Assembly: GCF_006345805.1 (NCBI RefSeq)
Contig: NC_042998.1
Location: 137,144,001 to 137,208,000, forward strand
Length of the DNA stretch: 64,000 nt
Reading direction: 5' to 3'
From: Octopus sinensis
Lineage: Eukaryota
Made by a program: the position numbers and the translations under genes
The notes under the pieces: generated by a model
Databases searched by the model: none
Seen by the model: only the letters and a program-made list of their open reading frames with translations
Told to the model about the DNA's origin: nothing
Shown here: piece by piece, positions 6,769 through 59,939 of the stretch
Numbering within the stretch: position 1 is the stretch's first letter
Layout of the letters: each line of letters opens with the position of its first letter

Positions 6769-6834
<66 letters not shown>

Positions 6835-6837
<3 letters not shown>

Positions 6838-9800: not shown

Positions 9801-10473
9801 TGGCTAGTTCAGTGACGGCTAGGTTTATGTTGTTTATAATTGGTGTTGTTATTGCGTTTATTTTTATTCTTGGGAGGTATGGTCGGTGGTCCATTTTGAG
9901 CTCTGTGGTTTTTAGTTCTTTGATTATTTTATTTTTTATTTTTTATATTATCATAATCATTAGGCTCCCCTTCGTTGTTTACATCGTGTTTGTTGGGAAT
10001 GTTGCGTTTGTCTTCGTGTTTTACAGTTTCAGTGTTTATATTGTTGTGTGGCTTCTATCTACATTTTCTTGGTGTATTTTTTCTTTTAAATGTTCTATTT
10101 CTATTTCTGATATTTTTTTGGCTTTGAGAATGTATCTTCGTACGTTAGCTAATTTATTAGGGTTCATTGCTGTATCCAAGTCTATATCTCTATTATTTTC
10201 CTTCCATATTTTATATGTATGTGTTGTTGTATTTTCATTTTGTGGGTAGAGCATTGCTGTGAAGTATGCGTGTAAGATAGAAATGTATTCCTCACGTGTC
10301 CATTTACGTCTTTTGGGTTTTAATTGCGGGACATGAGGTACAACGTCCGGCCCATTATTTTGACGGTCGTCATTTTCGTAGAGTACCGGTCCGTTTATTT
10401 CTGTTGTCACATTATTTCGCACGTGTAGTTTTTCGTACATTTTTTGTTGTAGGTTTAATGTACGTACCACTCG
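6835..10473 (-). mobile_element. R4/Dong-clade non-LTR retrotransposon (RT plus restriction-like endonuclease), near full length, inactivated
   Basis: Four collinear ORF pieces: 10470-10036 (N-terminal RRKWTREE), 9894-7675 (RT: NYRPITCL, DYKKAFDS, GIFQGDTLSP, LYMDDLKL), 7576-7289 (CRICG..ETINHI..C knuckle) and 7285-6932 (RPD..LIDV..EKLSKY RLE). R4-type LHG / WL..GLKAETEG..A.QDQ segment is present. Frameshifts near 10036, 9945 and 7760; nonsense codons near 7610 and 7287. Short 3' UTR; (TAA)n on both sides. Confidence 0.92.
7675..9894 (-). CDS. Reverse transcriptase portion of the R4/Dong ORF (739-aa open segment of a broken ORF)
   Basis: Non-LTR RT motifs KAPGHD, NYRPITCL, EQKGCR, DYKKAFDS, QGD.LSP, YMDD, YKYLG. 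Confidence 0.9.
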   Translation of the reverse strand: MDHRPYLPRIKINAITTPIINNINLAVTELATETKKSDITELNDLIYAAATAATKEAGYSPKPTQTGVPPPKQTLWINNIQNKIKKIRKDLSILNEISKQATLLSNKKRPKMLRKYNITEKDLPEIKEKLKQDILAKAQRIRRYEKRQRFFEQNKKFNFDPKKFYQELGKNKIEVTAAPTAEVLEEFWKEIWSANEQPKKRSIKITNSASEQLWTPITTEEVTQALQKLSNWKAPGHDKISNFWLKYLTGMHKKLAENFNSILAEPETMPEWLTKGKTILIPKSNETTKPENYRPITCLPTMFKAFTAVISQRLNKHLDENKLFPEEQKGCRKGSYGCKDQLMINKAVTEDSHRKKKGLSMAWIDYKKAFDSIPHTWILETLAINKVAPTIIKFIEHSMNKWQTVLHLQTKEGLMKTKDIPIRRGIFQGDTLSPLLFCLALSPLSDMLNRTGCGYKCYGKTISHLLYMDDLKLYAANDKQLETLLKTVHGFTKEIDMKFGLEKCAKVTMKRGKLVKSNNITLDKTNEIKELDQSQTYKYLGIHELDKTQHTQMKEKIKKEYYRRVRSILKTELNAKNKIIGINTLAVPVISYSYNILNWTRNELSKIDRKTRKILTGSRMHHPKSDIERLYIQRIEGGRDLIQLENYYKITTIGLQKYLLQKEGKLIQIAAKHEKNKNLFSVFKEADKYKQEIIPPNKHKEEEEDDEFKNKSYKTNEIQTKNGTATSHDKTMARKTPSW

Positions 10474-10482
10474 ATTATTATT

Positions 10483-10513
<31 letters not shown>

Positions 10514-10550
10514 TTATTATTATTGTTATTATTATTATTATTTAGTTAGT

Positions 10551-11962
10551 TAGTTAGTTAGTTAATTTGGCTCAAAAGCAAATAGCAAGGCCATGTAGGG
10601 GGACATGGAGTTAAGTACAGGGTGGTGTTCATGTAAAGAGTTCAGGCCACTTGAGGTCCAGGGAGGCTTTGAACAAAGCGGTCGTCGGCATCTTCACCAT
10701 CTCGTCTGGCAGCTTGTTCCACGGATCCGCAACCCGGACGGAGAAAGCTCCTCTCCTTCGATTGAGATGAAATCGTCGCAGGTAGAGCTTTCGGAATGAC
10801 CCCGCAGCCGACGCTCCGGAGCAGGAGTGAAGAACAGCTCTTTCGAGAGGTTACACTTCCCGCTTATGATGTTGTGGGCGAGAATGAGATCACCACGGCG
10901 GCGGCGTTTTTCAAGAGAATAAAGGTCGAGCGTCCTCAGCCTTTCTTCGTAGGACAAATTTTTGAGACCATGAACCATGCGGGTAGCCAGCCTCTGGACT
11001 CTTTCGAGATGCTGTATGTCTTTGAGGAGATAAGGAGAAGAGGCTTGAATCCCATACTCCAATATGGGTCTCACCAGCGTGACATAGAGTGGCAGGAATA
11101 TGGCTGCTGTGAGCATTCCGAATGACCGTCGAATCAAAAACAGAATTCCGCGCGCTTTGTTGGCAGCATGGACGCACTGGGCCGAAGGCGAAAAGGAGGA
11201 ATCCACCAAGATACCCAGGTCCTTTACCTGATCGGTCCTCTCCAGCAGCAGACGACCCGGCTCGAAATCAAGTTGAGTTGCAGGAGTAGAGCCGACAGGC
11301 AGATGACAGCACTTTGACACGTTCAGACACAGGTCCCAATCGTTAGACCACTTCCAAATTTGGTGGAGGCATCGACGAAGATCCTCTATACTACCGCGAG
11401 GAGCGACCAGTTTGATATCGTCGGCAAATAGAAGGGTGTGTTGCGTGAGGTCGTCGGGCAAGTCATTTATGAAGGCTAAGAACAACAAGGGCCCAAGCAC
11501 TGAACCTTGAGGCACGCCACTGCTCGCACTGGAGACGTCGGACCGCGAACCATTAACTTGAACTTGGAAGGAGCGATCTGAGAGGAAGGCACCAACCCAT
11601 CGTACAATATCCGGATGGAAACTATATGCTTGAAGCTTGACAAGTAGTAGGCGGTGGTTTACCGAGTCAAAAGCTTTGGCAAAGTCCAATAAAACGATGT
11701 CAACAGCATCACTATCATCGAGGATGCGCGTCACCAATTCTTCCATTACTAGTAAGTTGGTCAAGCATGATCTCTTCGGCACGAAGCCGTGTTGGGAATC
11801 AGTGATCGAGGCTGTGTTTAGGAGGTGGAGCATCATACTTTTCTTAAGGATGGTTTCGAACATCTTGCTGATTATTGATGTAAGGGAAACCGGTCGGTAG
11901 TTAAGCGGGTCTTCGCGGCTCCCTTTCTTGAAAATTGGGCAGATTATCGCTGTTCTCCAGTG
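10551..11962 (-). mobile_element. 5'-truncated CR1-clade LINE (RT and 3' end)
   Basis: NYRPVSLTS, QHGF, DFAKAFDSV, SGVPQGSVLGPLLF, FADD, LERVQR.ATR, LEKRR.RGDLI. A 1-nt deletion near 10790 shifts the C-terminus (true end WNKLP...ELFT* at 10629-10631). (TAAC)n tail at 10551-10565. Confidence 0.92.
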
Positions 11963-12530
11963 GCCGCGAGCTGGCAGAATCGTTAGCACGCCGGGCGAAA
12001 TGCTTAGCAGTATTTCGTCTGCCGCTACGTTCTGAGTTCAAAATAAGTACCAGATTAAATAAGTACCAGTTGCGCACTGGGGTCGATGCAATAGACTTCA
12101 TCCGTTTGTCTGTCCTTGTTTGTTCTCTCTGTGTTTAGCCTCATGTGGGTAGTAAAGAAATAGGTATTTCGCCCGTCGCTATGCTCTGAGTTCAAATTCC
12201 GCCAAAGTCGACTTTACCTTTCATCCTTTCAAGGTTGATAAAATAAGTATCAGTTGAACACTGGGATCGATATAATCGTCTCTTCCCCACCTCCACCAAG
12301 CTGCCCTTGTGGCAAAAATTTGAAATTGTAATTATTATTATTACTATTATTATTATTAAGGCAGCGAGCTTAGTGGTATTCCGCCCCTCGCTACGTTCTG
12401 AGTTCAAATTTCGCCGAGCTTGACTTGCCCTTTCATCTTTTCGGGGTCCATAAATTAAGTAACAGTTCAGTAATCGAATTAAGCCCTCCCCACAAATTTC
12501 AGGCCTTGTACCTATAGAAAAAAGAATCGT
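11963..12530 (+). mobile_element. tRNA-derived SINE family 1, tandem cluster
   Basis: Head GGCGAGCTGGCAGAATCG (A-box-like), GAGTTCAAATTCC (B-box-like), core GCCTTTCATCCTTTCGGGGTCGATAAA..AAGTACCAG. The same sequence recurs many times in the window. Confidence 0.85.
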
Positions 12531-14276: not shown

Positions 14277-17200
14277 ATAGAGACCCGTGATGAGTGTGTA
14301 TGCTCCAACTATGTGATCTACTGATGACGAAAAAGTTTATTTCTATCATGCTTTGAAGGGCATTATAAGAAATATCCTTCGGGCAGACAAAGTCATCATA
14401 CTAGGTGACTTTAATGCTAGAGTGGGTAGGGATTTTAACACATGGACTGTAATTGGAAAGCATGGGGTGGGAAAGTGTAATAGTAATGTTATGCTTCTGC
14501 TGCAGATGTGCGAGGAGCTGCGTCTGTGTGTTACCAATACCATGTTTCAACAAAAGAATAAGTTTAAGACCACACGGATGCACCCTACATCTAAAGAATG
14601 GCATATTCTGGATTACATCCTTGTTAGGGTGCGTGACAGATGAGATGTGCAGTGTGTTCGTGTTCTTCGTAGGGCTGAGTGCTGGACTGACCACCGCCTA
14701 GTACGTACAACAGTGAAATTCGTCACAAAACGTAAAATCCGGGCTGCAAGTATTAAACTGCCTAAAAGACTGAATGTTGCTCATCTTAGGTGTAATAGTG
14801 TAAAGAGAACTTTACGAAAGGAAATGAATGTTGCAGATATTGGTGAGGATTGGCCGACCCTTAAAAAGTCAGTTTATGATATAGGCAAGAAAGTTCTGGG
14901 ATTGATACAAAGAAAGCATCAAGATTGGTTTAAAGAAAATGATAAACAAATAGATGATTCATTGGCTGATAAAAGACGTACTTTGTCACGCTCTTTGTCA
15001 GCAAAGCCACAAGAGAGAGATGTGCTGCATAGGGAATTCAAGGATGTGAAATCACGTGTGAGGCGGAGACTCTCTCAGATGAGGGATACGTGGTGGAGTA
15101 AGAAGGCTGATGAGATACAGGCGGCGTCGGATTCCAATAACACAAAGCTGTTATATGGTCTCTTGCGAGAAGTTTATGGACCGACATTTTCTCTGATGAC
15201 ACCACTTCGAAAAAGGGATGGTAAATAACTTCTTCGAGATTCACAAGGAATTCTGCGAAGGTGGCGAAAACACTTTGATGAACTTTTGAATCAGCAGTCT
15301 GTAGTTAGTGAGGATATTCTCAATCTCATCCCTGAGTTACCTGTGAAGGCGACTCTCGCGGAACCACCAATGTTGGAGGAAGTCGCGGTGGTTGTCTCAA
15401 GGATGAATAATGGGAGGTCTCCGGGTACGGATTGCATACATGCAGTTGTTACAGCAAGGCGGTGAGAAACTTCTGCAGCAACTTCACTCCTCGTTTGGCA
15501 GGATATCGGCTAGTGAATCTGTACCTAAGGACTGGAGAAATACAGTAATCGTGGTCTTATATAAGGGAATATCATTGCTTTCTGTCGTAGGCAAGGTTTT
15601 TATGCAGGGTACTTCTGGATCGTCTGCTGAAACACATTACAGATTGTGTTCTTCCAGACAGTCAATCTGGCTTTCGTGTGGGACGCGGCTCCGATGATGT
15701 GATCTTCTCAGCTAGACAGCTTCAGGATAAGCGTGTCGAACAGGGTCTAGATTTATATCAGATTTTTGTCGATCTGACAAAAGCCTTCGATACTGTTAAT
15801 GGAAATGCACTGTGGAAAGTCCTCCAAAAACTTGGTTGTCCTAAAAAGTTCCTTGCTTTGGTTAGGTCTTTTCATGAAGACATGAAGGGTAGGGTTAATG
15901 TTAGAGGTAAAATGTCGGAGCCCATCTCAATAAAAAAAATGTAGTGAAACAGGGGGATATTTTGGCACCGACCCTATTTGCCATATATTTTGCGATGGTT
16001 TTCTGTATTGCGTTCAAAAATTGCAGATATGGTGTTTACAGCCATTATCGAATCTCTGGCAGCATATTTAATATCAAGCGCTTTGCTGCAAAAACAAAGA
16101 GACCTTTTGTATGAAGATGATTGTGATCTAGTAGCACACACAGAGGAGACTGATATTCAACACATTTTGAATGCATTCTCCGATGCTTGTACTGCCTTAG
16201 GATTGACGGTCAGTCTCAAGAAAACTGTTGTCATGTACCAATCTGCCCCTGGTAAGCAGTATAGTGAACCAAATATCTATGTGTATGGTAAACGATTTGG
16301 TGTAGTTGATCAGTTTGTCTACCTGGGAAGCACTGTTCATAGATATAGCAATTTGAATAGTGAAATTCCATACACAATTAGGAAAGCAAGTGATGCTTTC
16401 GGAAGGCTAGAAAGGCACCTCTGGAGTCGGCGAGACATATGCAGGAAGACGAAGCTAAAGGTATACGAGGCGTGTGTGCTCTCTTCTTTATGCCTGCGAC
16501 AGCTGGGTCACATATCGATCCACCTTTAACAGCTGGAACGTTTCCATCAGATGTGTCTCATACGGATCTATGGCATTAATTGGGAGGACCGCATCAGTGA
16601 TCTTGAGATATTGGAAGGCTCTCGGTGTGAAAGTATAGAAGCTCTTGTGTTGAAGCAAAGGCTCGGATGGAGTGGTCATCTGGTCAGAATGAAAGATTCA
16701 AGGATGCCAAAAGAACTCTTTTATGGAGAGTTAGTTTAAGTAGAACGACCTCCCCATAAACCAAAAATAGACTAGCTGAAGGCTTCCTTGAAATATGCTA
16801 GCATCTCTCCTGACACATGGGAGGGCATAGCTATTGACCGTAACAGGTGGAGAAGGGTTGTGCATGAGGGGACAGCTACTTTTGAGAAATCTCGAGTTGC
16901 GCATAAGAAAGTAAGGAGGGATGTCAGGAAGGGCATTGCTGTTGCACTTCCAGACGGTAAGCTGGGCTCATGAGTCATCTTCGTAGTCATAAAGCTAGAC
17001 CGATGATTGACTACCAGGCCGCTGGTGATGGTGCTACACACCATACTAATCATGTCTGTCGGGCATGTGGAAGGGTGTGGGATTCAGTGGGAGGACTTAA
17101 ACGTCATGCAAAGGTACATAAAGCCCAATTACAATTACAGCCGGCTATTGCTAGTAAAGATTTTAGCTGCCAATTCTGTCCAAGACATTGTAGACCTTTA

Positions 17201-17330
17201 GCTGGGCTAAGAAGTCACATTCGATCACAGCACCGTTAACAGTTAAGCTTCGTGCAATGGCCATACTCGATAACGAGGGGGCAGCCATCATGTAAGTATG
17301 TATGTACGTATGTATGTATGTATGTATGTT
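14277..17330 (+). mobile_element. Decayed RTE-clade LINE (APE, RT, C-terminal C2H2 fingers)
   Basis: SVYAPT, ILGDFNARVG, HP.SKEWHILDYILVR, TDHRLV, FVDLTKAFDTV, LLYEDDC, FVYLGS, RLGWSGHLVRM..RMPK..FYGEL. Multiple stops and frameshifts; (GTAT)n tail after about 17292. Confidence 0.9.
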
Positions 17331-20559: not shown

Positions 20560-21200
<641 letters not shown>

Positions 21201-46748: not shown

Positions 46749-49700
46749 CTAGCAGTAAAACCCGTCATTGATCGGGTAATTACTTTTACTGTTTATCGGG
46801 AGCCACATTGAAAGTATTATTATATGTATAACTAGCAGTATCGCCCGGCGTTGCTCGGGTTTGTAAGGGAAATAACTATATAAGCATTTTTAGAGAGTTA
46901 CTTCCCTTATAGATGCCAATTCGGGCTTTCTTAGCCATTTCTGTTTTGGTGTCTTCAAGCCATGAAGTCGTTGTTCTAAAAGAACGCTGGTCTCCTTGAC
47001 AACGCTTTACGACGTTGATTTCCTTACACTCCCTTCCCCACAGCTTCACGAGGGAGGGAAGAAGGGGGAGAAGCAAACAGGTACAGGTGTGACCATGGAC
47101 GCCAACTCCGCCGCCATCGACACACGAAAAATTATGCATTAAAATGGAATAAAAAATGATGTTAAATTATTTTTTAAATCGTAGACTCATCGTAGACGCG
47201 CGCTAATACTCAGACGGGCTCGATATGAATCACGACTATAAGATACCCGAATTTGGTTAAACTGCACCGCAAAATGTGGGAGTAGTTAGGAATCTAAATC
47301 GAAGGGGACAGACACTCACACAACTACAGTTTTATATATATAGATTTACTCCTGTATGTGTGTATTTTTAGAAGAGAAAACCGTATAATAATTGAAGTAG
47401 AAGAAAGATCAATATCATACATGAACTTGTGTTTGTTTATGATATGACAATAATAAGTTACTTGTAAGTCGGTGAGCTGGCAGAAACGTTAGCATATCGG
47501 GCGAAATTCCGCCGAGGTCGACTTTCATCCTTTCGGGGTCGATAAATTAAGTACCAGTTGCGCACTGAGATCGATCTCATTTACTGGCTCCCTCCTCCAA
47601 AATTTAGGGCCATGTGTCTAGAGTAGAAAAGAATAAGTTAGTTGTATGTGCTATTTTATTTATCTATACAGTAATAGCAATGATATAATATCTTTATAAG
47701 AGAAAAACATGTAATAATTGAAGTAAAAAAAAGATCATTTTTACACATGACCTTTTTTTTTTTTTACTACATGAAAATAGTTCAGCTGATTGATGTCTTG
47801 AAAGCCTCGATCTCATATTTGTTGAAAGTTGAAGTGTTTTCACATGATGCCATAATACAGAAGACTTTATTGAAGCATTGAACTCATCCACTTTTCTTCC
47901 TCTGGAAACAACTGGTAGTGTTTGTCGGAAGTCTCCTAACAATAATATTGTACATTTCCCATCATAGAATTGCAATTTCTAATGTCTCGTAATGTTCTGT
48001 CAAAAGCTTTCTTGTGGGCCATAGTACATTCGTCCCAGACAATTAAGTGACATCTTTGTATTAGTTCACCCATTGCAGAATGTTTAGATATATTACAAAC
48101 TGGATCTTGTTTGTTGTTAGATAAATCTAAAGGTAACTTGAGTGTTGAATAGGCAGTCCGACCTCCGGGTAGTAATGTTGCTGCAATCCCAGAAGAAGTA
48201 GTAACTAAAGCTATTTTATTTTCTTGACGAACTTTAGACAGGCGGAGTTTACAAATGTTTTCCAGTACCTTCTGGAACATCTAAGAAATAAAGTCCTCCT
48301 GTGTTATTGTTAATAATTTCTATGACAGTAGAATATGCACGACGTTGATCAGATAATTTGGGGAAATTATTATTTATGTACATGGTCAGCTCCTCCTTAT
48401 CATAGGAAATTTCTTGGATCTTTTCAATTCTGAAGCCAGGACCACAGATCTTTCTACTTAACTAAATATTCTGAAACTTCGTATGCTGATAGAGTCTAGC
48501 AAAACAAGACACAGGTTGGAACTAGTTTATTTGAGAAAAATCTATTTTATGACTTTAATCGTAGATTAAAACTGCGAATTTTAACCAATCAGATTGTTTG
48601 TTTTCATGTGTAAAACTTGACTGCATTCTATTAGTGTGACGTAGAAAGCGCTTTTGTGACGTACTAACGTTCGGAAAACTGTAAACAAACACAGAACGTA
48701 ACGGCAGACGAAATACGGCTACGCATTTCGCCCGGCGTGCTAACGTTTCTGCCAGCTCTTTGCTTTTTTAATATTAAATTTCTTGCCTTTTGCACAAATA
48801 AATACAATAAGTGAAATGAAACGCATTAGCTTAGAACGAAATCTTGTTAGAAGCCGCGTCACTGAGATGCCACTTCTTAATAGCAAACGAAAGCAAGTAC
48901 TAACAGAATGGAAACATTTTCAATTTAATACATGTGGCTTATTAACTAGTTTTAAATATTGTTATTAGAAGGTGGCTGACTATAGGATCCTGGAAACATG
49001 AGTACGTTAAATAATTAGAAGGAGATTTCACGGAGACATGCGGCTTGTTTACATTTAAGATGTTTAATACGTCACCAAATTGGTGGTCGAGACGGAGTAA
49101 ATAAAATAAAGCCGAATGACGGAATATCATTGGTTAAAATTCTAATTATTAAACAACGTTAAACTTAGAAGTTACAATTCCGTTTTCATTCTGGTTTACA
49201 ATTAAGTTTACTTTTGACACATTCTACCAGTATACGAAGTTTCAAATTGTTTGGTTCAGTAGGAAAAATTTGAAAAAACTGGCTTCAGAATTGAAAAGAT
49301 CCAATTTCTTACTATTTCAGTGGACAATGTTAAGATCCCCTCTATTAGTTAGTGAGAGAACTAAATTTTGTATAGATTCACCTCCCATGGAAATAATTTG
49401 ATCTCTTTCAATCAAAGCAGCATTGTATATAGCATCAGTAAAACCAACATCTTGCTCGGGATTATTGAACTGAAGTTGATGCTTGAAATCTTCAAAAAGA
49501 TCATTTCTGAACATATTCCACAGTTGAACAGAATTACTTCACAATTTTTGAGAATAATAGCAAAAATACATCATAAAGTCTTATGTGTTTTGATATTGAA
49601 GCTTCTTCTAATGTAGCTTCCCATTGCTGATCATTTGCAAGCAAACCTAACTTGAAACACGCTTCTCGATATGTTCTGCAAATCTTACCATCGACTTGTT

Positions 49701-50299: not shown

Positions 50300-51390
50300 A
50301 TGGTTTCAAATTTTGGTACAATGTCAGCAATTTCGGGAGATGCAGTATGTCGATCATATCGACCTCAATGTTCAGCTGGTAATTATTTTATCGACCTCTA
50401 AGCGGATGAAAGACAAAGTCGACCTCGGCGGCACTCGAACTGAGAACGTAAAGGCGAACGACATACCTATTTCTTTACTACCCACAAGGGGCTAAACACA
50501 GAGCGGACAAACAAGGACAGACAAACGGATTAAGTCGATTATATCCACCCCAGTGCGTAACTGGTACTAAATTTATCGACCCCGAAAGGATGAAAGGTAA
50601 AGTTGACCTCGGCGGAACTTGATCTCAGAACGTAACCGCAGACGAAATACCGCTAAGCATTTTGTCCGTCGTCTTAACGATCCTACCTACTCGCCACCTT
50701 CGAAATGATAACATAATTATTATTATTATTTATAATTTAAGCACAAGACCAGCAATTTTGAAGGGAAAGCTTTAGTAGATCGATTATTTAATGATAGCAA
50801 GAGAATGAAAGGTAAAATTGACCTCGCCAGAATTTTAACTTACAACGTAAAAAAGCCACAACTAAACATTGCCAGCAAATTTTTCCGATGCTCTAACAAT
50901 ACTGCCAATTCACAACCCCCTGGTTTCTTATTTAAGCACTAGTCCAGCAATTTTGAGAGGCGGGTATTAATCGATACCACCGACCCCAGTACTTTATTGT
51001 ATTGATCCCAGAGGAATGAAAGGCAAAACTAACCTCAGTTAGATTTGAACTCGGAATGTAAAAAGCGGCAACTAAATTTTGCATCAGCAATAATGAACCA
51101 GCCTCTCAGTGGTGATAATATTTCTAAGTTTGGCCCAAGACCAACCAATTTCAATGAAAGTGGGTAAATCAAGAACACCGACTATTCTAAGAGAGAGAGT
51201 GTGTGTGGTAAGTTGATAACGTCGACCTTAGTGCTCAACTGATACTTGTTTCATCGACCGTGAAAAGATAAATGGCGAAGTCAATATCGGTGGAATTTGA
51301 ACTCAGAACGTAAAAATTGGGGGGGAAAAATATATGTATGACGTTACCTATTTTGTCCAAACTAGCTAACGAGTCTACAAGTTCGCTGCT
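50300..51390 (-). mobile_element. Cluster of SINE family 1 copies, including one tandem unit with the Tx1-like tail
   Basis: Repeated AAAGTCGACCTCGGCGGAA.TTGAACTCAGAACGTA; tail at about 50467-50530. Confidence 0.8.
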
Positions 51391-52067: not shown

Positions 52068-53880
52068 TATTTCTTTATTACCCACAAAGGGGCCACGAAG
52101 ATGGGGACATTACAAGACGGGACATGGGGTACATAAAGTAAAAATAAAATATGAAGTAAAAGATGAATTATAAGTAATGAGATGGAACGGCTTACGAACC
52201 CCCAACTCGCAGTTCCGTTTAAAATACAAATGTACATTTCATATATTCCAATACAATTTTACAGTTACATATATTCCAGTTCAAAGTACAATAATTTTAC
52301 AATTTTACATGTTAACATTACATATATTCCTGTTCAAAATACAACTTTACATCATACAATTTTACAATTAACAATTCTAATTCTTTTACATTAGACGCTC
52401 GTCCGTCATATAATCCAATAGGTCCATTTGGTCTATTACATCTGGTAATTTATCATACCGTACATAATGCGTTATATGCATAGCATTAAATATCTTTTTT
52501 AATTTTGTGTATGTCTCTTTGTCTATAATGACGCCTTTTACATCGTCACCATACAGTTTTGGGTTCACCTTCACCCTGACCAACCCTTTCTTACCTACAA
52601 GTCTCTTTTCCACTTCTGTATTCTTGATATACATCACAACTGCCTTCAAGTTTTTTCCTGTAGGCCTTCTTCCATATTTACACGATTCCAATTGTTCGTT
52701 CACTCTTGTCTCCCATTCTTGTTCAAACTCTGTCCTTGGCCGCTCTCTCGCCTTCTCTTTTACTTCCTGTTCTTTGTATGTTCTCTCTTCTGCTATCTTG
52801 CTTTTGATTTTTTTCTTTTTTAGATCCTTCGGTGGTGATTCCACCCTTGATCTCTTCCTATCTTCTGTTTTTTCCTCTTCTGCACTTGCTCGTTCTTCCT
52901 CATTTAACTGCTCCTCCATTTGTGCTTCCTCCGCCTTCGCCTCCTCCACACACGCATCCTTACACTCCTCCATCACAACCTCTGGTGCTTTTGTTTTTTC
53001 CCGCGGGCACACATCCTTCATGTGGCCCCTCGATTTACAATTATAGCAGATAGGGGGTCTTCCCTCTACCACAACTCGGAGCCGTGTCTCGTCAGGGTAG
53101 ACCAACTCCTCCGGGATGTTGTACAGGTCTCGCACGGTTATGTGTGCTAGAACCTGCACCGTATATCCCCACCACTTCACCTCTGCTGACTTCTCCACCT
53201 TCAGTACCTCCACATCATCCTTGCAGTTAAACAGCACTGCTGCCAGCAACCTTTCCATATTAAATTCGGGTGAGATTCTATTGATTCTCATCCTCACTGC
53301 TCTCCTTCCGCAGTAACTTGGTAGCAAAGTCCACTTATCCGATTTCAAAATTCTTGTTGCATTCTTTTTTGCCTCATTTTCTGTTTCAAAATATACCACC
53401 ACCGTGGCATACTTCCTTCCTCTTTTGAAAAATGTGGGTTCACCCTCAATTTCCTTCAGACACCTTTCTACTTCTTCCATTTCCGCTACTTCAATTTTTT
53501 TCGACTCCACACACCACGTCCTGTACGTTATAGTACGCTTCTCTGCACTGCTTTCCTCCTCCTCGGACGGTGTGACTATCACGCAGTCACCCTCCCTCTT
53601 TAAACTGTCGAAATACTTTTGCAAAGTCTTCTGTTCGACCACCACCTCCTCCATCTCCAGCTCACCGGCAACCAGGCCTCTGCCTGCCGCTCGCGCGTAA
53701 GTCTGCTCTTGCATTTTCAAGAAAAAAAACTATTCCACGTCCTCCAACGAACTCGAACTCACAACCCCCTCACTCGAAATAAACACACCAGAATAACTCC
53801 AAATAACCTATTTGATTTGCTAATTTCCATTACAAATGAAAAAGAAAAAAAAGCAATATAATTTCTGAGAGTAAATGTAT
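52068..53880 (-). mobile_element. ORF1-only (HAL1-like) L1/Tx1-type retroelement A
   Basis: T-rich 5' UTR, single intact ORF, ~320-bp 3' UTR ending GCCCCTTTGTGGGTAATAAAGAAATA. No ORF2 sequence between the stop codon and the polyA signal. The 5' boundary is approximate. Confidence 0.7.
52386..53714 (-). CDS. L1/Tx1 ORF1p-like nucleic-acid-binding protein with CCHC zinc knuckle (442 aa from the ATG at 53714)
   Basis: Uninterrupted ORF. TYARAA N-terminal motif, RRM-like block, LRVVVEGRPPICYNCKSRGHMKDVCP (CX2CX4HX4C), charged coiled region. Confidence 0.8.
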   Translation of the reverse strand: MQEQTYARAAGRGLVAGELEMEEVVVEQKTLQKYFDSLKREGDCVIVTPSEEEESSAEKRTITYRTWCVESKKIEVAEMEEVERCLKEIEGEPTFFKRGRKYATVVVYFETENEAKKNATRILKSDKWTLLPSYCGRRAVRMRINRISPEFNMERLLAAVLFNCKDDVEVLKVEKSAEVKWWGYTVQVLAHITVRDLYNIPEELVYPDETRLRVVVEGRPPICYNCKSRGHMKDVCPREKTKAPEVVMEECKDACVEEAKAEEAQMEEQLNEEERASAEEEKTEDRKRSRVESPPKDLKKKKIKSKIAEERTYKEQEVKEKARERPRTEFEQEWETRVNEQLESCKYGRRPTGKNLKAVVMYIKNTEVEKRLVGKKGLVRVKVNPKLYGDDVKGVIIDKETYTKLKKIFNAMHITHYVRYDKLPDVIDQMDLLDYMTDERLM

Positions 53881-53889
53881 TTTAGATGT

Positions 53890-55600
53890 TTTAAGTCTAA
53901 GTTCAAATCCCACTGGAGTCGACTTTGTCTTTCTGCACTGATAATATAAGTACCAGTAAAGTAATCGGTTGATTAGATCGATAATCACCTTTTCCAATAT
54001 TCTTGACCTGGTATAAGGCGGCGACCTGACAAAATCTTTAGCATACCGGGGGCCAAAATGCTTAGCAGCTTTTCGTCTGTCTTTACGTTGTGAGTTCAAA
54101 TTCCGCCGAGGTCGACTTTGCCTTTCATCCTTTCGGGTTCGATAAATTAAGTACCAGTTGAATACTAGGGTTGATTTAATTGACTTATTCTCGCCCCCGA
54201 AATTGCTGACTTTAAACCAAAGTTTGAAACCAGTAGTTGTGGCTTTGTGCTAAAGTTAGAAATCTCACCGGGATCATCTTTACCTTTCATCTTTTCGAGG
54301 AGGATAAAATAAAGTTCTAGTCAAATTCAGGAGTTAATGGTGTCGGATGAACCACGTCCTCTCAAAATTTCTGGTCTTGTGCCTAAGTCAAAAACTATTA
54401 TAATTATTAATAGTTGGTACAAGAAGAGCAGCTGGCTGGTACAATCGTCAGTGAGTCAGGCTAAATGTATTGCGGTATTTTTTCTGGCTTTTTACATTTT
54501 AAGCTCAACTTTTGCCGAGGTTGACTTTGCCTTTTATCCTTTCGAAGTCGTTAAAACAAGTATCAGTTGAGTACTGGGGTTGATGTAACCAGCTTAGCAC
54601 ACACATACTCAAAATTGTACCGAGATCAGAAATCTTTATTATTAGCATAAAGAAGTTCAGAGCCGGATGAAATACCATTGTGGAATATAATTAATCACTT
54701 TTGACTATTTTGAATTCAAATCACGCCAAGTTTGACTCCGCCTTCATCTCACGGGGTTGTAAAAGTAAGTGCCAGCCAACTACAGGGATCGATATTTAGT
54801 CGAATATCCCACCTTGGTTAATAATTTGTAGATTCGTTTTTGTAATAGAAATCATTATTACATTGTATTTTTCCCTTGGGTAGCAACTGTTATTTCCTAT
54901 TTGCTTGCCCTCAGAAAGTGTGAAAAATGGCTAATATTTCCTTCAAACTTTGATTTTGTTACATTTATTCAAGCTCCAAAGAATTTCTTTCACATATAGC
55001 TATGGTTCTCTCCCACTACTCCTGCTCATGATCAGAGATGCACATATTGTCAGTCACTAAGGGACATGCTCAAATGGTTAAGATCAAGCAATTCACAAAC
55101 AAATCTATGGCATTGAGCAGAATATTTGCAATAACGATATTTCTGCTTCAGCAACTCAGTGCTGAATGTGTCTGAAATGTCCAGATCACAAAAGCAAAGT
55201 TTTAGAAAAACAGTAGTCATTTCCCTCGATTTCAAGTTAGAAGCTAAAAGGAAATAAAACTTATTGACCAAAAACAAAATAATAATAATTTTGTTACGCA
55301 TTGTTAACAATGCTATATGTAACTACATACTATTATACAAGTAATACTATATATTGCTATTAAAACAATATAGCTGTCTTAACCATATGGAAGAAAATTT
55401 CCGAAAATTTCCGAAACACAAAGGCCACAGGATGATAATAATTTTTAACGTGGGAACAAAAAAGAGAATAAAGGCAAAGTTGGCCTCGGTGAGATTTGAA
55501 TTCAGAAAGTAAAGAGCTAGAACAAATACTGCAAAATATTTTGACCGACGGTTTAACGATTCTGGCAATTTGCCGGTCTTTGAAGGCGGCGAGCAGGCAG
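53890..55600. mobile_element. SINE family 1 copies in mixed orientation between the two ORF1-only elements
   Basis: Cores at about 53890-53990, 54020-54240 and 54410-54600 (+), and 55470-55570 (-). Confidence 0.7.
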
Positions 55601-55614
55601 AAACGCCAGCACGC

Positions 55615-57241
55615 TTCCGGTGTTATTCAAGGTATACGTGAGTCATTTTTGACGGTATTTTCAGTAGTAACATCGTTTTGTTTTTGTATCAGTGTTTTAA
55701 ACATTTCGTTAATTATTTTTGTGTTGCTTTGCAGCAATTTGTCTGTGCTTTCTCTCCTCGTTTGAGGAAAGTTAGCTATGGATAGAAAGGACAATTTATC
55801 TTATTCAGACCTTAGTGGGTCTGAATTATCATCGTCTGAAGAGGAACTAGTACTATCAGTAAAAAAATGAATAGCCAATTAAAGAAGAAAAGTTTTGCGC
55901 AAGTGGCGGAATTTGCGAATAAGGAGTGGATCTGTCAATATTGAAAAGTTATAAGATGATACACAGAGAAGGGGGAGACGTAAAGTTATCGCCACCCCAT
56001 GAAGTAATAAAAAATATGCAGGAAAGGACTATTGTGTACAAAGTATATTCTGTAGAAGATAAGAGAATTGAAATTGTATCAGCGGAGAAAATTGAAAAAG
56101 CCTTGAAGTCAATATGGCAAGATATGTTATATCTTGCCAGAGGAAGTCGATATGGATCAGTGGAGGTTCACTTTAAAGAGGCAGCAAAGGTAAAGCAACA
56201 CTTGGCAACCCCGTTAAGGATGAAAAGTATGGTCTTCTTACCCACATACCTTGGAAGGAGAGCTTCCAGGATTAGGGTAGAGGGGATCCCACTCGAAATA
56301 GATGTGGCTTAGGTAGCGGCGGCTATACCTCTAAGCAGCGAAGGGGAAATAGCCGTTCTCCAAATCATGAAAACAGAAACAACCAATTGGAAAGGACAAA
56401 CGTTGGATATAATTATACAAAGTTCAACAGAAAACCTAGAAAAAGTGGTGGAAACAGTAACAGTTGGTGGAGGGCAGAATCCCTCGATGTTTCAAATGTG
56501 ACCAAAAGGGGCGCATTAGAGTGGACTACCCTTCACCGACTGAGAAAAATCAGGAAGAATTCAGGAAGGCACCAGAGAAGGTGGAGGAAATACAAATAAA
56601 CAACGACGAGCCGTAGAAAGTGGTAGAAAAGAAAAAACAGAGGAAGAGAAAGAAAGCAGGTCAGACTGAATGGGAATAGACACCGAGTCTACCCATTCCC
56701 CTCCGACACGAAAACAAAAAAAAAAGAAACATACACACAAGAAATCTCAAACTCCCTCCCTCCAGACAAAAAAGACATGTCCAGTAATCATGACTGACGA
56801 TTCAAACGAGGATCTGTGTAAAGAAATACTGAAGTGGGATGACTTTAAGGCGGTAGGAAGTGAAGGGTTTGATAATGTTAAGACGCTGCACCGTTGTGTG
56901 CTACCTACGGAGGAACAGTTGGAGAGAGTTCTGAAACATAAAAGTGGACACAGGTGGTGGGAGATAGAGATGGATAGGAAGGAGCTACCGAGATTTTCGG
57001 CGTACGAGGAGATGTTAGAACTATATGGGGTTGACATTCTAGAATGAACGGGGTACAAAAGATGATAAAGGGTAGAAATAGGGTAACCCAAAAGTGGGGC
57101 TGAGTGCACCATTCCATTTATTCATTTTCGTGTTACCATTCATCTTTGTCATACATTGTTTTTTGTTTTATCGTTCTGTGTCCCCACATGTGATGTGTTG
57201 TCCCCTCTATGTTGGCCCCGCTGATGGGCAATAAAGAGTCA
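55615..57241 (+). pseudogene. ORF1-only L1/Tx1-type retroelement B (disrupted ORF1, about 55778-57047) inserted in a SINE-1 head
   Basis: RTIVYKVYSVE..LPTYLGRRA.RIRVEGI aligns with element A (RTITYRTWCVE..LPSYCGRRAVRMRINRI). Decayed knuckle EGRIPRCFKCDQKGRIRVDYP; 3' end GGCCCCGCTGATGGGCAATAAAG. ~16-bp TSD AGAAACGCCAGCACGC (55599-55614) / AGAAACGTTAGCAGGC (57242-57257). Confidence 0.78.
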
Positions 57242-57790
57242 AGAAACGTTAGCAGGCCGAGCGAAATGCTTAGCGGTATTTCGTCCGCCATTACGTTCTG
57301 AGTTCAAATTCCGCCGAGGTCGACTTTCGGGGTCGATTAAATAAGAACCAGTTACACACTGAGGTCGATATAATCGACTTAATCCATGTTTCTGTCCTTG
57401 TTTGTCCCCTCTGTGTTTAGCCCCTTGTGGGTAGTAAAGAAATAGGTATTTCGTCTGCCGCTACGTTCTGAGTTCAAATTCCGCCGAGGTTGGCTTTGCC
57501 TTTCATCTTTTCGGGGTCGATTAAATAAGTACCAGTTACGAACTGGGGTCGATATAATCGACTTAATCCGTTTGTCTGTCCTTGCTTGTCCCCTCTCTGT
57601 TTAGCCCTTTGTGGGTAGTAAAGAATTAGGTATTTCATCTGTCTTTACGTTCTGAGTTCAAATTCCGCCGAGGTCGACTTTGCCTTTCCTTCTTTCGGGG
57701 TCGATAAATTAAGTACCAGTTGCGTACTGGGGTCGATCTAATCGACCAGCCCCCTTCCCAAAAATTTCGGGCCTTAAGCCTAGAGTAGAA
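57242..57790 (+). repeat. Tandem SINE-1 array (three bodies, about 180-bp period)
   Basis: Bodies restart at GGTATTTC at about 57275, 57445 and 57629, separated by a ~64-bp tail ending GTGGGTAGTAAAGAAATA. Confidence 0.88.
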
Positions 57791-57919
57791 AAGAATTTGC
57801 CGGCCTTTGAATTAACGAATAACAATTGTTTCAAATTTTGGCTCAAATCCATCAGAATTTGCCGGCCTTTGAATTAACGAATAACAATTGTTTCAAATTT
57901 TGGCTCAAATCCATCAGTT

Positions 57920-59340
57920 TTGAAGGCAGTGGGTTAGTCGATTACATTGGCACTTTATTTTGTCGACCTCAAAGGATGAGAAGCAAAGTTGACTTCGGCA
58001 ATAGTTGGTCTCAGAACGTAAATAGCTGGATCAAATGCCTCTAATTATTTTGTCTCTTAATGACCCTGCCAGCTTGTCACCTTACGGTTAAGGTAACAAT
58101 AAAGGCTTCAAATTTTAGTACTAGCTCAGCAATTTTAGGGTTACTCGATTACGCCGACCCCAGTGCTTAGCTGGTACTTCATTTTATCAACCTTCGAAAA
58201 GATGAAAGACAAATTGGGCTACGGCAGAATTTGAACTCAGATCGTAAAGAGCCAGAAGAAATTCCGCTAGGCATTTTCTGCGATGCGTTTATGACACTGC
58301 CAGCTCAACATCATATGGTTAAGGGATAATCCTTTAGACTATAGGCATAAGGCCAGGAATTTGTGGGGAGGGGCTTGTCGATTACAATGCTTAGCTGATA
58401 CTTATTTTACCGACCCCGAAAGGCATGAAAAGCAAAGTCGACCTCGGCGGAATTTGAATTCAGTACGCAAAGCATGAAGAAATGCCGCTAAGCATTATGC
58501 CCAGTACGCTAACGATTCTTATTTCTTTATCGCCCACAAGGGGCTAAACATAGAGAGGACAAACAAGGAAAGACAAAGGTATTAAGTTGATTATATCGAC
58601 CCCAGTGCGTAACTGGTACTTATTTAATCGACTCCGAAAGGATAAAAAGCAAAGTCGACCTTGGCGAAATTTGAACTCAGAACGTAAAGACAGACGAAAT
58701 ACCTATTTCTTTACTCCCCACAAGGGGCTAAACACAGAGAGGACAAACAAGGACAGACAAACGGATTAAGTCGATTATATCGACCCCAGTGCGTAACTGG
58801 TACTTATTTAATCGATCCCGAAAGGATGAAAGGCAAAGTCGACCTCGGCGGAATTTGAACTCAGAACGTAGTGGCAGACGAAATACTACTAAACATTTCG
58901 CCCGACGTGCTAACGTTTCTGCAGCTCGTCGCCCTATGGTTACTGGATAATATTAGTTTCAAATTTTGGCACAAAGCTAAAAATTTTGGAGAAAAGGCTA
59001 AGTCGATTATATCGATACCGGTGCTCAACTGATTCTTATCTTATCGACCTCCAAAGGATGAAAGGTAAAGTCAACTTCGGCGGAATTTGTACTCAAAACA
59101 TAAAGATAGCCGAAATACCTATTTCTTTACTACCCACATAGAGGACAAACAAGGACAGACAAACGGATTAAGTTGATTATATCGACCCCAGTGCGTAACT
59201 GATACTTATTTAATCGACTCCGATAGGATGAAAGGCAAAGTCGGCCTCGGCGGAATATGAACTCAGAACGTAGCAGCAGACGAAATACCGTAGAGCATTC
59301 TGTCCGGGATGCTAACGACTCTGCAAGTTCGCTGCCCAAT
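57920..59340 (-). repeat. Reverse-oriented SINE-1 copies and tandem arrays
   Basis: Tails at about 58519-58585, 58704-58768 and 59117-59170; heads at about 58920 and 59335. Confidence 0.85.
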
Positions 59341-59939
59341 AGTTAATGAATAATATTATTATTACTTTTGGTAAATTTCTCCCCTCCAGTCACCTGTGGA
59401 AGAATTTGAACTCAGTATTGCAATCTAATGAAACATCCATCTGTTGTATATTGTTTTTGCTGTTTCATTAAATGTAGTATACCTTGGAGTGGTGGATGAG
59501 GAGGAGAGTGATATTGGAACTGAAACCGAAGAAATTAAAACTGAATGTTAATTTTTATTAACTCTTATTCAAATGTCATTTTTTAAAAGAGAAAGCGTTT
59601 TAAATTTTCAATGTAATTTTTTTTTTTTCGATTTTCTTCTCGACCTACCAATCAAACTTTATTAATGTATCTCGGGTTTCATCGGTTTTAGAATAACAAA
59701 TTGGAAAATAGAAAAATCAATAAAGAAAATTTCCCTGGTGATGTAATATTATTGAAATGAATTCATTTACGAAGGAGAGAAGCACTATATTATTTAAAAT
59801 ACAGTTGTTAGATTGGTTTTCAATGAAGCATATGCAGCCATTAGCTGATACATTGTCACGTTCTTTATGTAATAGGAAAAAAAATTTTTTAACCACTAAA
59901 TTTATTTACTGAGCATCTAAACTTCATCTTTCATAGCAC

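What the first reader, a model, noticed from the sequence alone, without database searches (positions are those of the whole stretch)
55585..59340. Possible SINE-targeting Tx1/L1-type retrotransposition system: ORF1-only elements and SINE units share one 3' tail and join the same point in a SINE head
Seen: element B splits a SINE-1 head (GGCGGCGAGC.GGC|AGAAACG..AGC) with a ~16-bp duplication. Independently, at 58501-58540 (minus strand) a SINE-unit tail joins the same position (...AAAGAAATA|AGAATCGTTAGC). All other array tails join one second fixed site (|GGTATTTCG). The ~64-bp tail (TGTC.GTCCTTGTTTGTCCCC...GCCCCTTGTGGGTAGTAAAGAAATA) closely matches the 3' end of ORF1-only element A (TGTCCCGTCTTGTAATGTCCCC...GCCCCTTTGTGGGTAATAAAGAAATA). 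Where the array end is readable (57242-57790, and likely 11963-12330) the last unit has the ordinary SINE tail. Known: Tx1-clade LINEs are often target-specific (tRNA-related, snRNA or transposon targets), and SINEs borrow 3' tails from their partner LINE. Inference: an unseen autonomous Tx1 targets this tRNA-like head and mobilises both ORF1-only elements and a tail-swapped SINE that inserts into its own family, growing tandem arrays.
Basis: partly seen in the sequence, partly recalled or inferred. Interest (0 to 1): 0.8.

Follow-up and report, generated by a model that had tools for sequence, protein, structure and literature searches.

The report
Octopus SINE that inserts into SINEs
In this octopus sequence, a short mobile element carrying the 3' end of an L1/Tx1-like LINE family has inserted repeatedly at one exact base inside older copies of its own kind, building small tandem arrays; this is a new twist on a known type of target-choosing retrotransposon.

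Summary
The window is Octopus DNA, dense in one SINE family. Seven SINE units carry a 66-nt "L" tail, and every one is followed directly by another SINE: six at consensus position 48 (|GGTATTTCG) and one at position 15 (|AGAATCG). Degraded ORF1-only element B interrupts another SINE head at that same position 15.

The arrays are not copies of one ancestral chimera. Their last units belong to different ordinary subfamilies (two tail types). In two arrays an old-type head is joined to a young L-type body within about 10 nt of position 48. That pattern fits precise 184-bp insertions into resident SINEs.

The L tail shares a conserved module with ORF1-only elements A and B and with relatives in O. 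bimaculoides, O. sinensis and O. vulgaris. One O. bimaculoides copy also carries an APE endonuclease and a zf-RVT domain, and it sits in a head-to-tail array of such elements.

Best reading: an L1/Tx1-like LINE family mobilises ORF1-only elements and a tail-swapped SINE by target-primed reverse transcription into SINE heads. Tx1 clade membership is untested. Strict endonuclease specificity is doubtful, because three related copies lie at non-SINE sites. The nearest precedent is crocodilian SINEU with Tx1-Mar, so this is a new variant of a known kind.

The parts
55567..55584 (+). 5' copy of the 18-bp target-site duplication (AATTTGCCGGTCTTTGAA) of the resident SINE that hosts element B and array I
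   Evidence: The same 18-mer, 17 of 18 identical, lies at 57784-57801 directly after the ordinary tail.
55585..55614 (+). Head of the resident SINE, consensus positions 1-30. Its last 16 nt (55599-55614) are the upstream copy of the duplication flanking element B.
   Evidence: blastn to the SINE consensus; sequence.
55615..57241 (+). Element B: a degraded ORF1-only LINE derivative, inserted at position 14|15 of the SINE head. Its tail ends ...GGGCAATAAAGAGTCA.
   Evidence: tblastn to element A and octopus ORF1 relatives at 55890-56595, broken by stops and frameshifts; tail module aligned.
57242..57444 (+). Array I unit 1: SINE positions 15-231 with L tail. It has an internal 15-nt deletion.
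57445..57628 (+). Array I unit 2: a 184-bp L unit, positions 48-231.
57629..57783 (+). Array I last unit: position 48 to an ordinary O1 tail (..CCTAGAGTAGAAAAG). This is the 3' part of the resident SINE.
57784..57801 (+). 3' copy of the 18-bp target-site duplication of the resident SINE (AATTTGCCGGCCTTTGAA).
58704..58933 (-). Array II unit 1: full head (A19/G36 type), body and L tail.
58520..58703 (-). Array II unit 2: L unit, positions 48-231. Its tail is joined to position 15 of the next SINE.
58333..58519 (-). Array II last unit: an older SINE running from position 15 (AGAATCGTTAGC...) to an O1 tail. It is 78% identical to the L consensus.
59120..59336 (-). Array III unit 1: old-type head (T19, A34, A36) joined to an L-type body and L tail. 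The tail has a 14-nt deletion.
58956..59119 (-). Array III last unit: position 48 to an ordinary O2 tail (..CCAAAATTTGAAAC).
50468..50698 (-). Array IV unit 1: old-type head (77% identity to the L consensus) joined to an L-type body (92%) and L tail.
50302..50467 (-). Array IV last unit: position 48 to an O2 tail.
11962..12162 (+). Array V unit 1: head, body (with a roughly 30-nt deletion) and L tail.
12163..12325 (+). Array V last unit: position 48 to an O2 tail.
52068..53860 (-). Element A: an ORF1-only LINE derivative with an intact 442/444-aa ORF (52386-53714/53720). The protein has two RRM-like folds, a CCHC knuckle, a long helix and a C-terminal domain. The tail ends ...GGGTAATAAAGAAATA at 52068. 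The 5' boundary is approximate, and no target-site duplication was found.
20909..20985 (-). A 77-bp 5'-truncated copy of the same tail module (...GTGGCTAATAAAGAAACA), at a non-SINE site beside microsatellites.

Best explanation
An L1/Tx1-like, APE-type LINE family of Octopus mobilises two kinds of non-autonomous RNA through a shared, conserved 3' tail module. One kind is the roughly 1.7-1.9-kb ORF1-only element (A and B here). The other is SINE-L, a tail-swapped derivative of the local SINE.

SINE-L copies were inserted by target-primed reverse transcription into resident SINE copies at fixed nucleotides of the SINE head. The main site is 47|48. A rarer site is 14|15, which element B also used.

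Because the incoming cDNA is homologous to the target upstream of the nick, the 5' junction forms in register. Each event therefore adds exactly one 184-bp unit (positions 48-231) and regenerates the target. Repeated events grow head-to-tail arrays. In those arrays the head and the last unit, with its ordinary tail, are the two halves of the original resident SINE.

Shown: the junction positions, their independence, the chimeric structure of the arrays, the tail relationship, and the existence of an APE/zf-RVT LINE with this tail type.

Inferred: TPRT as the mechanism, homology-assisted 5' joining, and the source of specificity. That source could be endonuclease preference, or pairing of a read-through RNA 3' end (..AUAGGUAUUU) with the nicked SINE DNA.
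For: 1. All 7 L tails are followed by a SINE: 6 at position 48 and 1 at position 15. No ordinary tail is ever joined to position 48.
2. The last units carry two different ordinary tails: O1 in arrays I and II, O2 in arrays III, IV and V. They are about 79% identical to each other, against about 87-90% among L units.
3. In arrays III and IV the head (positions 1-47) is old-type. It has T19, A34 and A36 and is 75-77% identical to the L consensus. Positions 48-165 of the same unit are L-type at 92-93%. In array II the head from position 15 came in with the insert and is A19/G36.
4. Arrays I and III are each bounded by an outer target-site duplication of about 18-20 bp. That duplication pairs the head with the last unit's tail.
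5. Adjacent units are no more alike than units from different arrays: 0.91 against up to 0.94.
6. Element B and SINE-L unit II.2 use the same nucleotide, 14|15, in two different SINEs.
7. The tail module is conserved across SINE-L, A, B, the fragment at 20909, and elements in L002-L005. This includes ORF2-bearing copy c4.
8. Copy c4 has an ORF1 homologue, Exo_endo_phos and zf-RVT, and its best PDB match is the human L1 endonuclease.
9. The ORF1-only element in L005 has a clean target-site duplication of about 15 bp.
10. ORF1-only elements form head-to-tail arrays in L002 and L003.
11. Published precedent: SINEU and Tx1-Mar share a target, and tandem SINEU-3 copies sandwich a target-site duplication (PMC4494074).
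Against: - The sample is only 7 SINE-L junctions in one 64-kb window. No L tail occurs in about 100 kb from three other Octopus assemblies.
- No LINE with a near-identical tail was found. The one ORF2 copy is internally deleted, and its RT lies in an assembly gap.
- No duplication longer than the shared 9-mer GGTATTTCG flanks L units, whereas B and the L005 element show 15-16 bp.
- LINE-type copies A, the fragment at 20909 and the L005 element sit at non-SINE sites, so the endonuclease alone may not be site-specific.
- The nick contexts of the different targets share no clear motif.
- All four position-48 residents have T at position 50. That is a minority state among other ordinary copies (about 3 of 11-12). 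The cause could be target choice or copying from the RNA, and the data do not settle it.
Confidence: 0.6

Rival explanations
1. RNA-level chimeras formed by template switching. During one retrotransposition event, reverse transcriptase copying an ordinary SINE RNA reaches a fixed RNA 5' end or stop. Position 48 lies at the edge of the apical loop of a predicted 13-bp hairpin, and position 15 is the other stop. The enzyme then jumps to the 3' end of an L-tailed RNA. Arrays are therefore made in one step rather than by insertion into resident DNA.
For: - Position 48 lies at the 3' edge of the apical loop of a predicted hairpin spanning 31-60.
- End-to-end template jumping is established for R2 and L1 reverse transcriptases (my knowledge), and U6/L1 chimeras are cited in PMC4494074.
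- The outer target-site duplications around arrays I and III would be expected under this model too.
- ORF1-only elements also occur head-to-tail, with a 5'-truncated upstream copy in L002.
Against: - Arrays III and IV have old-type heads joined to L-type bodies exactly at position 47/48. Explaining that would need a second, internal jump back to the first RNA.
- Only L tails are ever joined to position 48. No ordinary tail is, although ordinary SINE RNAs should be far more abundant.
- Element B shows a 16-bp duplication of the SINE head, as expected for insertion into DNA.
Confidence: 0.13
2. One ancestral tail-to-position-48 chimera became a composite SINE with an internal 184-bp repeat. It was amplified as a block by the ordinary SINE's LINE partner. 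Unit number then changed by unequal crossing-over or slippage, as in a VNTR.
For: - Every array ends in an ordinary tail that could drive block retrotransposition.
- Both L units of array I share C, and both of array II share T, at one tail position.
- A Pol III transcript of an array has no T4 terminator before the ordinary tail (sequence).
Against: - Last units carry two unrelated ordinary tails and are more diverged from each other (0.79) than L units are (0.87-0.90).
- Heads differ in subfamily between arrays.
- There is no position-specific clustering of units: I.1-II.1 0.93, I.2-II.2 0.89, I.2-II.1 0.94.
- A second junction type, at position 15, exists.
Confidence: 0.07
3. The arrays arose by DNA-level rearrangement in a SINE-dense region, through non-allelic recombination, gene conversion or replication slippage between neighbouring SINEs. 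No retrotransposition step would be specific to SINE heads.
For: The window is a SINE nest. It holds about 33 copies in 64 kb, and five minus-strand SINEs lie head-to-tail between 55461 and 59336. Four of the five arrays lie within 9 kb of each other.
Against: - Homologous recombination cannot create the non-homologous junction between L tail and position 48.
- That junction recurs with residents of different subfamilies, at 11962-12325 as well as near 50-59 kb.
- The L tail is LINE-derived, and it ends at the same nucleotide as LINE-type copies do.
Confidence: 0.05

Closest known systems
SINEU families mobilised by target-preferring Tx1-Mar LINEs in crocodilians (Kojima 2015, PMC4494074)
   Same: A SINE and Tx1-type LINEs share an insertion target inside another repeat family. 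Tandem SINE copies arise by sequential insertion at the regenerated target. Some LINEs carry target- or small-RNA-derived sequence at their 5' ends.
   Different: Here the target is the head of the SINE's own superfamily, not a Mariner transposon. The 5' junction is in register, so perfect 184-bp tandem units result, with at most 9 bp of visible duplication. The SINE shares a tail module with the LINE family. Tx1 membership of the octopus LINE is untested.
Tx1L inserted in the Tx1D DNA transposon of Xenopus, and other Tx1-clade site-specific LINEs such as Keno, Mutsu, Dewa, Kibi and Koshi (as summarised in PMC4494074)
   Same: These are APE-type LINEs with target preference, often found in tandem. 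In O. bimaculoides locus L003, the array of related elements lies between 261-274-nt inverted repeats, as though inside a foldback or TIR element.
   Different: Endonuclease specificity is not shown here. Several related copies are at unrelated sites. The host of the L003 array was not identified as a transposon.
HAL1 (half-L1): ORF1-only non-autonomous L1 derivatives of mammals (my knowledge)
   Same: Elements A, B and the copies in L001-L005 keep an ORF1 (RRM plus CCHC), lack ORF2, and share the 3' end type of an ORF2-bearing relative. One has a 15-bp target-site duplication.
   Different: This is a different ORF1 type (two RRM-like folds plus a zinc knuckle) in a mollusc host. The elements are frequently head-to-tail, and many members have intact ORFs.
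R2/R1-type precise integration guided by co-transcribed target sequence (Eickbush 2000 and Fujimoto 2004, as cited in PMC4494074)
   Same: Homology between the template RNA or cDNA and the target flanks would explain both the seamless 5' junction and the exclusive SINE-head targeting of SINE-L.
   Different: Those elements use a restriction-like or a highly specific APE endonuclease and rDNA targets. RNA-guided targeting here is only an inference.

Membership tests
APE-type LINE of the L1/Tx1 group (autonomous partner) | N-terminal apurinic-like endonuclease in ORF2 | tested here: met
   L003 copy c4: Pfam Exo_endo_phos E=8.8e-9, above the cut-off. The only PDB matches are the human L1 endonuclease and ORF2p, E=1.4e-3. 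The domain is not present in the window itself.
APE-type LINE of the L1/Tx1 group (autonomous partner) | Reverse transcriptase domain, and its placement in the Tx1 clade rather than L1 by phylogeny | not testable with these tools
   The RT region of c4 lies in an assembly gap (L003 15549-16870). No other ORF2 of the family is in the data, and no reference LINE set was available.
APE-type LINE of the L1/Tx1 group (autonomous partner) | C-terminal CCHC zinc-binding domain after the RT | tested here: met
   Pfam zf-RVT E=4.8e-10, above the cut-off, in c4.
APE-type LINE of the L1/Tx1 group (autonomous partner) | ORF1 encoding an RNA-binding protein upstream of ORF2 in the same element | tested here: met
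   An ORF1 homologue lies at L003 14703-14996, directly upstream of the APE, although c4 is internally deleted. The element A protein has a CCHC knuckle and two RRM-like folds.
Target-specific LINE (Kojima's criterion: one sequence type in more than 20% of flanks) | Most copies flanked by the same target sequence | tested here: inconclusive
   SINE-L: 7 of 7 junctions are in SINE heads. LINE-type copies split. B is in a SINE head. The L002 and L003 copies abut the 5' end ACGTTGAGCAGCAG of another element. A, the fragment at 20909 and the L005 element are at unrelated sites. The sample is far too small.
tRNA-derived SINE | Head recognisably derived from a tRNA, with Pol III A and B boxes | tested here: inconclusive
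   ARAGORN finds no tRNA. Rfam gives no tRNA hit even at E<=10. A box-B-like GAGTTCAAATTCC is visible by eye only.
SINE with a LINE-derived 3' tail (SINE/LINE partnership) | The 3' end is shared with a LINE family | tested here: met
   Conserved module in the alignment. Smith-Waterman scores are 20-29 against a shuffle maximum of 14-18. Identity is only 58-64%, so the direct partner was not found.
ORF1-only non-autonomous LINE derivative (HAL1-like) | ORF1 retained, ORF2 absent, LINE 3' end and target-site duplication present | tested here: met
   A: a 444-aa ORF followed by a 320-nt 3' UTR and the tail. L005: about 1.75 kb with a 15-bp target-site duplication. L003 c1 and c2: 1.8-1.9 kb.
Satellite or VNTR grown by unequal crossing-over | Neighbouring units more alike than units of different arrays | tested here: not met
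   I.1-I.2 is 0.91 and II.1-II.2 is 0.91, against I.2-II.1 at 0.94 and I.1-II.1 at 0.93.

The most novel reading that the evidence does not exclude
Target choice is supplied by the template RNA, not by the endonuclease. SINE-L is transcribed from inside an array, so its RNA ends a few bases into the next unit (..AAAGAAAUA-GGUAUUU). That 3' extension pairs with nicked SINE-head DNA and sets reverse transcription to start exactly at 47|48. The homologous head of the cDNA then closes the 5' junction in register. On this reading, an APE-type LINE system has evolved an RNA-guided, self-targeting SINE that seeds satellite-like arrays. It would explain three things: why only SINE-L is confined to SINE heads, why all position-48 targets carry the minority base T50, and why no long target-site duplication is seen.
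Probability: 0.2. Interest if true: 0.8.

Novelty: new variant of a known kind. Interest (0 to 1): 0.55.

Why it matters
SINEs make up about 12% of the O. vulgaris genome, and L1-Tx1 LINEs are reported as recently active there (PMC13282606). How they choose targets in cephalopods has not been described in the literature I could search.

A SINE that inserts in register into its own family gives a simple, testable route from dispersed repeat to tandem array, that is, satellite birth by retrotransposition rather than by unequal exchange. It would also give a natural system for asking a further question: does precise integration by an APE-type LINE come from the endonuclease, or from RNA-DNA homology?

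In addition, the finding documents a widespread family of ORF1-only elements with intact RRM-CCHC proteins in Octopus. These proteins contaminate gene models.

Tried and rejected
- A word-indexed protein search with the full element A ORF found nothing. With the full-length alignment it returned one protein. Low-complexity E/K-rich words swamped the candidate list. A trimmed alignment gave 12 Octopus proteins.
- Exact-protein look-ups for the window's own ORFs failed: element A and the 739-aa RT ORF. The source contig and species could therefore not be identified or extended. P0154 was also not on record.
- The metagenome scan with the tail 18-mer gave 25 hits, all chance matches without SINE context.
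- No L tails, and almost no copies of this SINE, occur in the five fetched Octopus loci. Genome-wide junction statistics could not be obtained.
- No target-site duplication was found for element A.
- tRNA detection on the SINE head failed.
- I considered a 16-bp duplication (positions 48-63) flanking L units and rejected it. Positions 57-63 differ between the two copies in arrays II to V.
- I looked for a common nick-site motif across position 15, position 48 and the L003 and L005 targets. None was convincing.
- No second ORF2 of the family is present in any held sequence.

Full report
**What the window is.** The 64-kb window is rich in microsatellites and has no tRNA genes. It holds about 33 copies or units of one SINE family. 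The only close protein relatives of its element A ORF are uncharacterised CCHC proteins of Octopus bimaculoides, O. vulgaris and O. sinensis. The window is therefore octopod DNA. The exact species and contig could not be identified.

**The SINE.** From the copies in the window I took a consensus with three parts:
- Head, positions 1-47: GGCGGCGAGCTGGCAGAAACGTTAGCACGCCGGGCGAAATGCTTAGC.
- Body, positions 48-165: GGTATTTCG...GGGGTCGATATAATCGAC.
- One of three tails: O1 (..CCTATAGTAGAAAAGAAT), O2 (..CCAAAATTTGAAACCATTATT), or the 66-nt L tail (TTAATCCGTTTGTCTGTCCTTGTTTGTCCCCTCTGTGTTTAGCCCCTTGTGGGTAGTAAAGAAATA).

Position 1 is a real 5' end, because the sequence upstream of it differs between copies.

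**Checking the observation.**
- SINE positions 1-30 lie at 55585-55614. Element B follows and ends ..AATAAAGAGTCA at 57241. The SINE resumes at position 15 at 57242. The two 16-mers are 13 of 16 identical.
- Seven units carry the L tail. Six are followed by position 48 of another unit and one (58520, minus strand) by position 15.
- No ordinary tail is ever joined to position 48.
- There are five arrays, not three: I 57242-57783(+), II 58333-58933(-), III 58956-59336(-), IV 50302-50698(-) and V 11962-12325(+). Each has a complete head at its 5' end (in array I the head is split by element B) and an ordinary tail at its 3' end.
- The tail 18-mer occurs 9 times against 0.13 expected.
- The similarity of the L tail to element A is close only over the last 25 nt or so. 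Over 60 nt it is 58-64% to A, B and the other LINE-type tails, which is still well above shuffled controls.

**Are the arrays one amplified chimera?** No, on four counts.
- The last units end in O1 tails in arrays I and II, and in O2 tails in arrays III, IV and V.
- Over positions 48-165 the last units are about 0.79 identical to each other. The L units are 0.87 identical, or about 0.90 without the deleted unit V.1.
- Units do not cluster by position in the array, and neighbours are no more alike than units of different arrays.
- The arrays have different flanks.

**Are they insertions into resident SINEs?** Three lines of evidence say yes.
- Subfamily markers. The non-CpG markers T19 and A34, together with A36, define older ordinary copies. 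A19/G36 defines a young subfamily seen in the solitary O1-tailed copy at 47468 and in the head that came in with the insert in array II.
- Chimeric units. In arrays III and IV the head carries the old markers and is 75-77% identical to the L consensus. Positions 48-165 of the same unit are L-type at 92-93%. The switch lies within the shared 9-mer GGTATTTCG, and resident-type differences in the last unit begin again at position 57.
- Outer duplications. Arrays I and III are each bounded by an outer target-site duplication that pairs the head with the last unit's tail. For array I it is AATTTGCCGGYCTTTGAA at 55567-55584 and 57784-57801. For array III it is an AT-rich sequence of about 20 bp.

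Each array is therefore one old SINE into which 184-bp L units, and in array I also element B, were later placed at exact positions.

**The LINE family.**
- Element A (52068 to about 53860, minus strand) has an intact 444-aa ORF. The ORF has a CCHC knuckle. An AlphaFold model (mean pLDDT 72.5) shows two RRM-like folds, a long helix and a C-terminal domain. Its best structural matches are tandem-RRM proteins.
- The ORF has 373 relatives in the representative library. The long ones are chimeric gene models, not ORF1-ORF2 fusions.
- Element B is a degraded homologue.
- I fetched five Octopus loci that encode relatives. They hold ORF1-only elements of 1.7-1.9 kb with the same tail module. The one in L005 has a clean duplication of about 15 bp, TGCTGGGTTCGKCTA.
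- In L003 (O. bimaculoides) four elements lie head-to-tail, with the tail ..AAATAAAGAAA abutting the next 5' end ACGTTGAGCAGCAG. L002 has the same junction behind a 5'-truncated copy.
- The fourth L003 element carries an ORF1 fragment, an Exo_endo_phos endonuclease, a zf-RVT domain and a tail most like the first half of the SINE L tail. It is internally deleted, and its RT lies in an assembly gap.
- The L003 array lies between 261-274-nt inverted repeats.
- The 5' leader ACGTTGAGCAGCAG, together with the preceding tail end AGAAA, resembles SINE positions 15-27 (AGAAACGTTAGCA). This hints that these elements carry a relic of the position-15 target, but I could not test it.

**Mechanism.** The simplest account is target-primed reverse transcription by this LINE family, acting on RNAs that bear its tail.
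- For element B, which has no homology to the target, a 16-bp duplication results.
- For SINE-L, the cDNA is homologous to the target upstream of the nick. The second strand can therefore start in register. This leaves the resident head in place and adds exactly positions 48-231. The target is regenerated and can be hit again.
- This matches what Kojima described for SINEU and Tx1-Mar, including tandem copies made by sequential insertion (PMC4494074).
- The source of specificity is unresolved. Element B and a SINE-L unit share 14|15, which argues for a DNA-determined nick. Against that, A, the 77-bp fragment at 20909 and the L005 element lie at unrelated sites, and the targets share no clear motif.
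- All four position-48 residents have T50, a minority state among other ordinary copies. That would follow if a read-through RNA end (..AUAGGUAUUU) had to pair with the nicked DNA. This is speculation.

**Rivals.**
- One-step template switching at fixed RNA ends fits the position of site 48 at the edge of a predicted apical loop. It does not fit the chimeric heads or the exclusive use of L tails.
- Block amplification of one chimera and DNA-level rearrangement are both contradicted by the data described above.

**Limits.**
- All SINE-L evidence comes from seven junctions in one window.
- The five other Octopus loci (about 100 kb) have no L tails and almost none of this SINE. A metagenome scan gave only chance hits.
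- The Tx1 label is untested. The direct LINE partner, which would have a near-identical tail, was not found.

**Verdict.** The Tx1 assignment and a strictly site-specific endonuclease are not shown. This is a new variant of a known kind, of moderate interest.

Noticed in passing
window 6769-10542 (LINE body 6835-10473, minus strand): A LINE with an RVT_1 domain in a 739-aa ORF, followed by a CCHC motif and a PD..D..K-like motif. It is flanked on both sides by (ATT)n arrays of 22-23 repeats. It looks like a Dong/R4-type restriction-like-endonuclease LINE inserted in a (TAA)n microsatellite. Dong-R4 is reported as abundant in O. vulgaris (PMC13282606).
   Followed up: partly
window 10560-11989 (minus strand): A 5'-truncated LINE: a 431-aa ORF with RVT_1, ending in a (TAAC)n-type tail. 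Its truncated 5' end abuts the head of SINE array V at 11962.
   Followed up: partly
window 55461-59372 (minus strand): Five ordinary SINEs, with heads at 59336, 58933, 58312, 58081 and 55577, lie head-to-tail. Each is preceded by a related 18-20-bp spacer, ..ATTATYCNTTAACCATAN. This looks like a chain of insertions re-using the same regenerated target-site duplication just 5' of a SINE head. Ordinary SINEs here therefore also tend to insert in tandem.
   Followed up: partly
window 57792-57917: A perfect 62-bp x2 tandem duplication. It contains part of the 3' target-site duplication copy of array I's resident SINE and the O2 tail of the minus-strand SINE at 57890-58081.
   Followed up: no
L003 8427-9160 and 18158-18431: The head-to-tail array of four LINE-type elements in O. 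bimaculoides lies between inverted repeats of 261-274 nt at about 90% complementarity. It appears to sit inside a foldback or TIR element, reminiscent of Tx1L in Tx1D. The host element was not identified.
   Followed up: partly
window 47468-47634 and O1 tails generally: The O1 tail ends ..GTAGAAAAGAAT, which resembles the end of the L tail (..GTAGTAAAGAAATA). The solitary O1 copy at 47468 has a 12-13-bp target-site duplication (AAGTTASTTGTA) at an unrelated site. The same or a related LINE may also move O1-tailed SINEs, without site preference.
   Followed up: no
proteins P0029, P0039, P0134: Relatives of the ORF1 protein occur fused to WD40, RGS or astacin domains in predicted proteins. These are probably transposon ORFs merged into host gene models in cephalopod annotations.
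   Followed up: no
window 14346-17240 (plus strand): Another degraded LINE of a different family, with an endonuclease end, RT fragments in several frames and a cysteine/histidine-rich C-terminal ORF. A (ATGT)n run follows at 17290-17329.
   Followed up: no
window 48688-48764 (minus strand): A SINE head fragment covering positions 7 to about 72. It is 96% identical to the L-type consensus and stops abruptly in non-SINE sequence. This is a 3'-truncated copy, which is unusual for retrotransposition.
   Followed up: no
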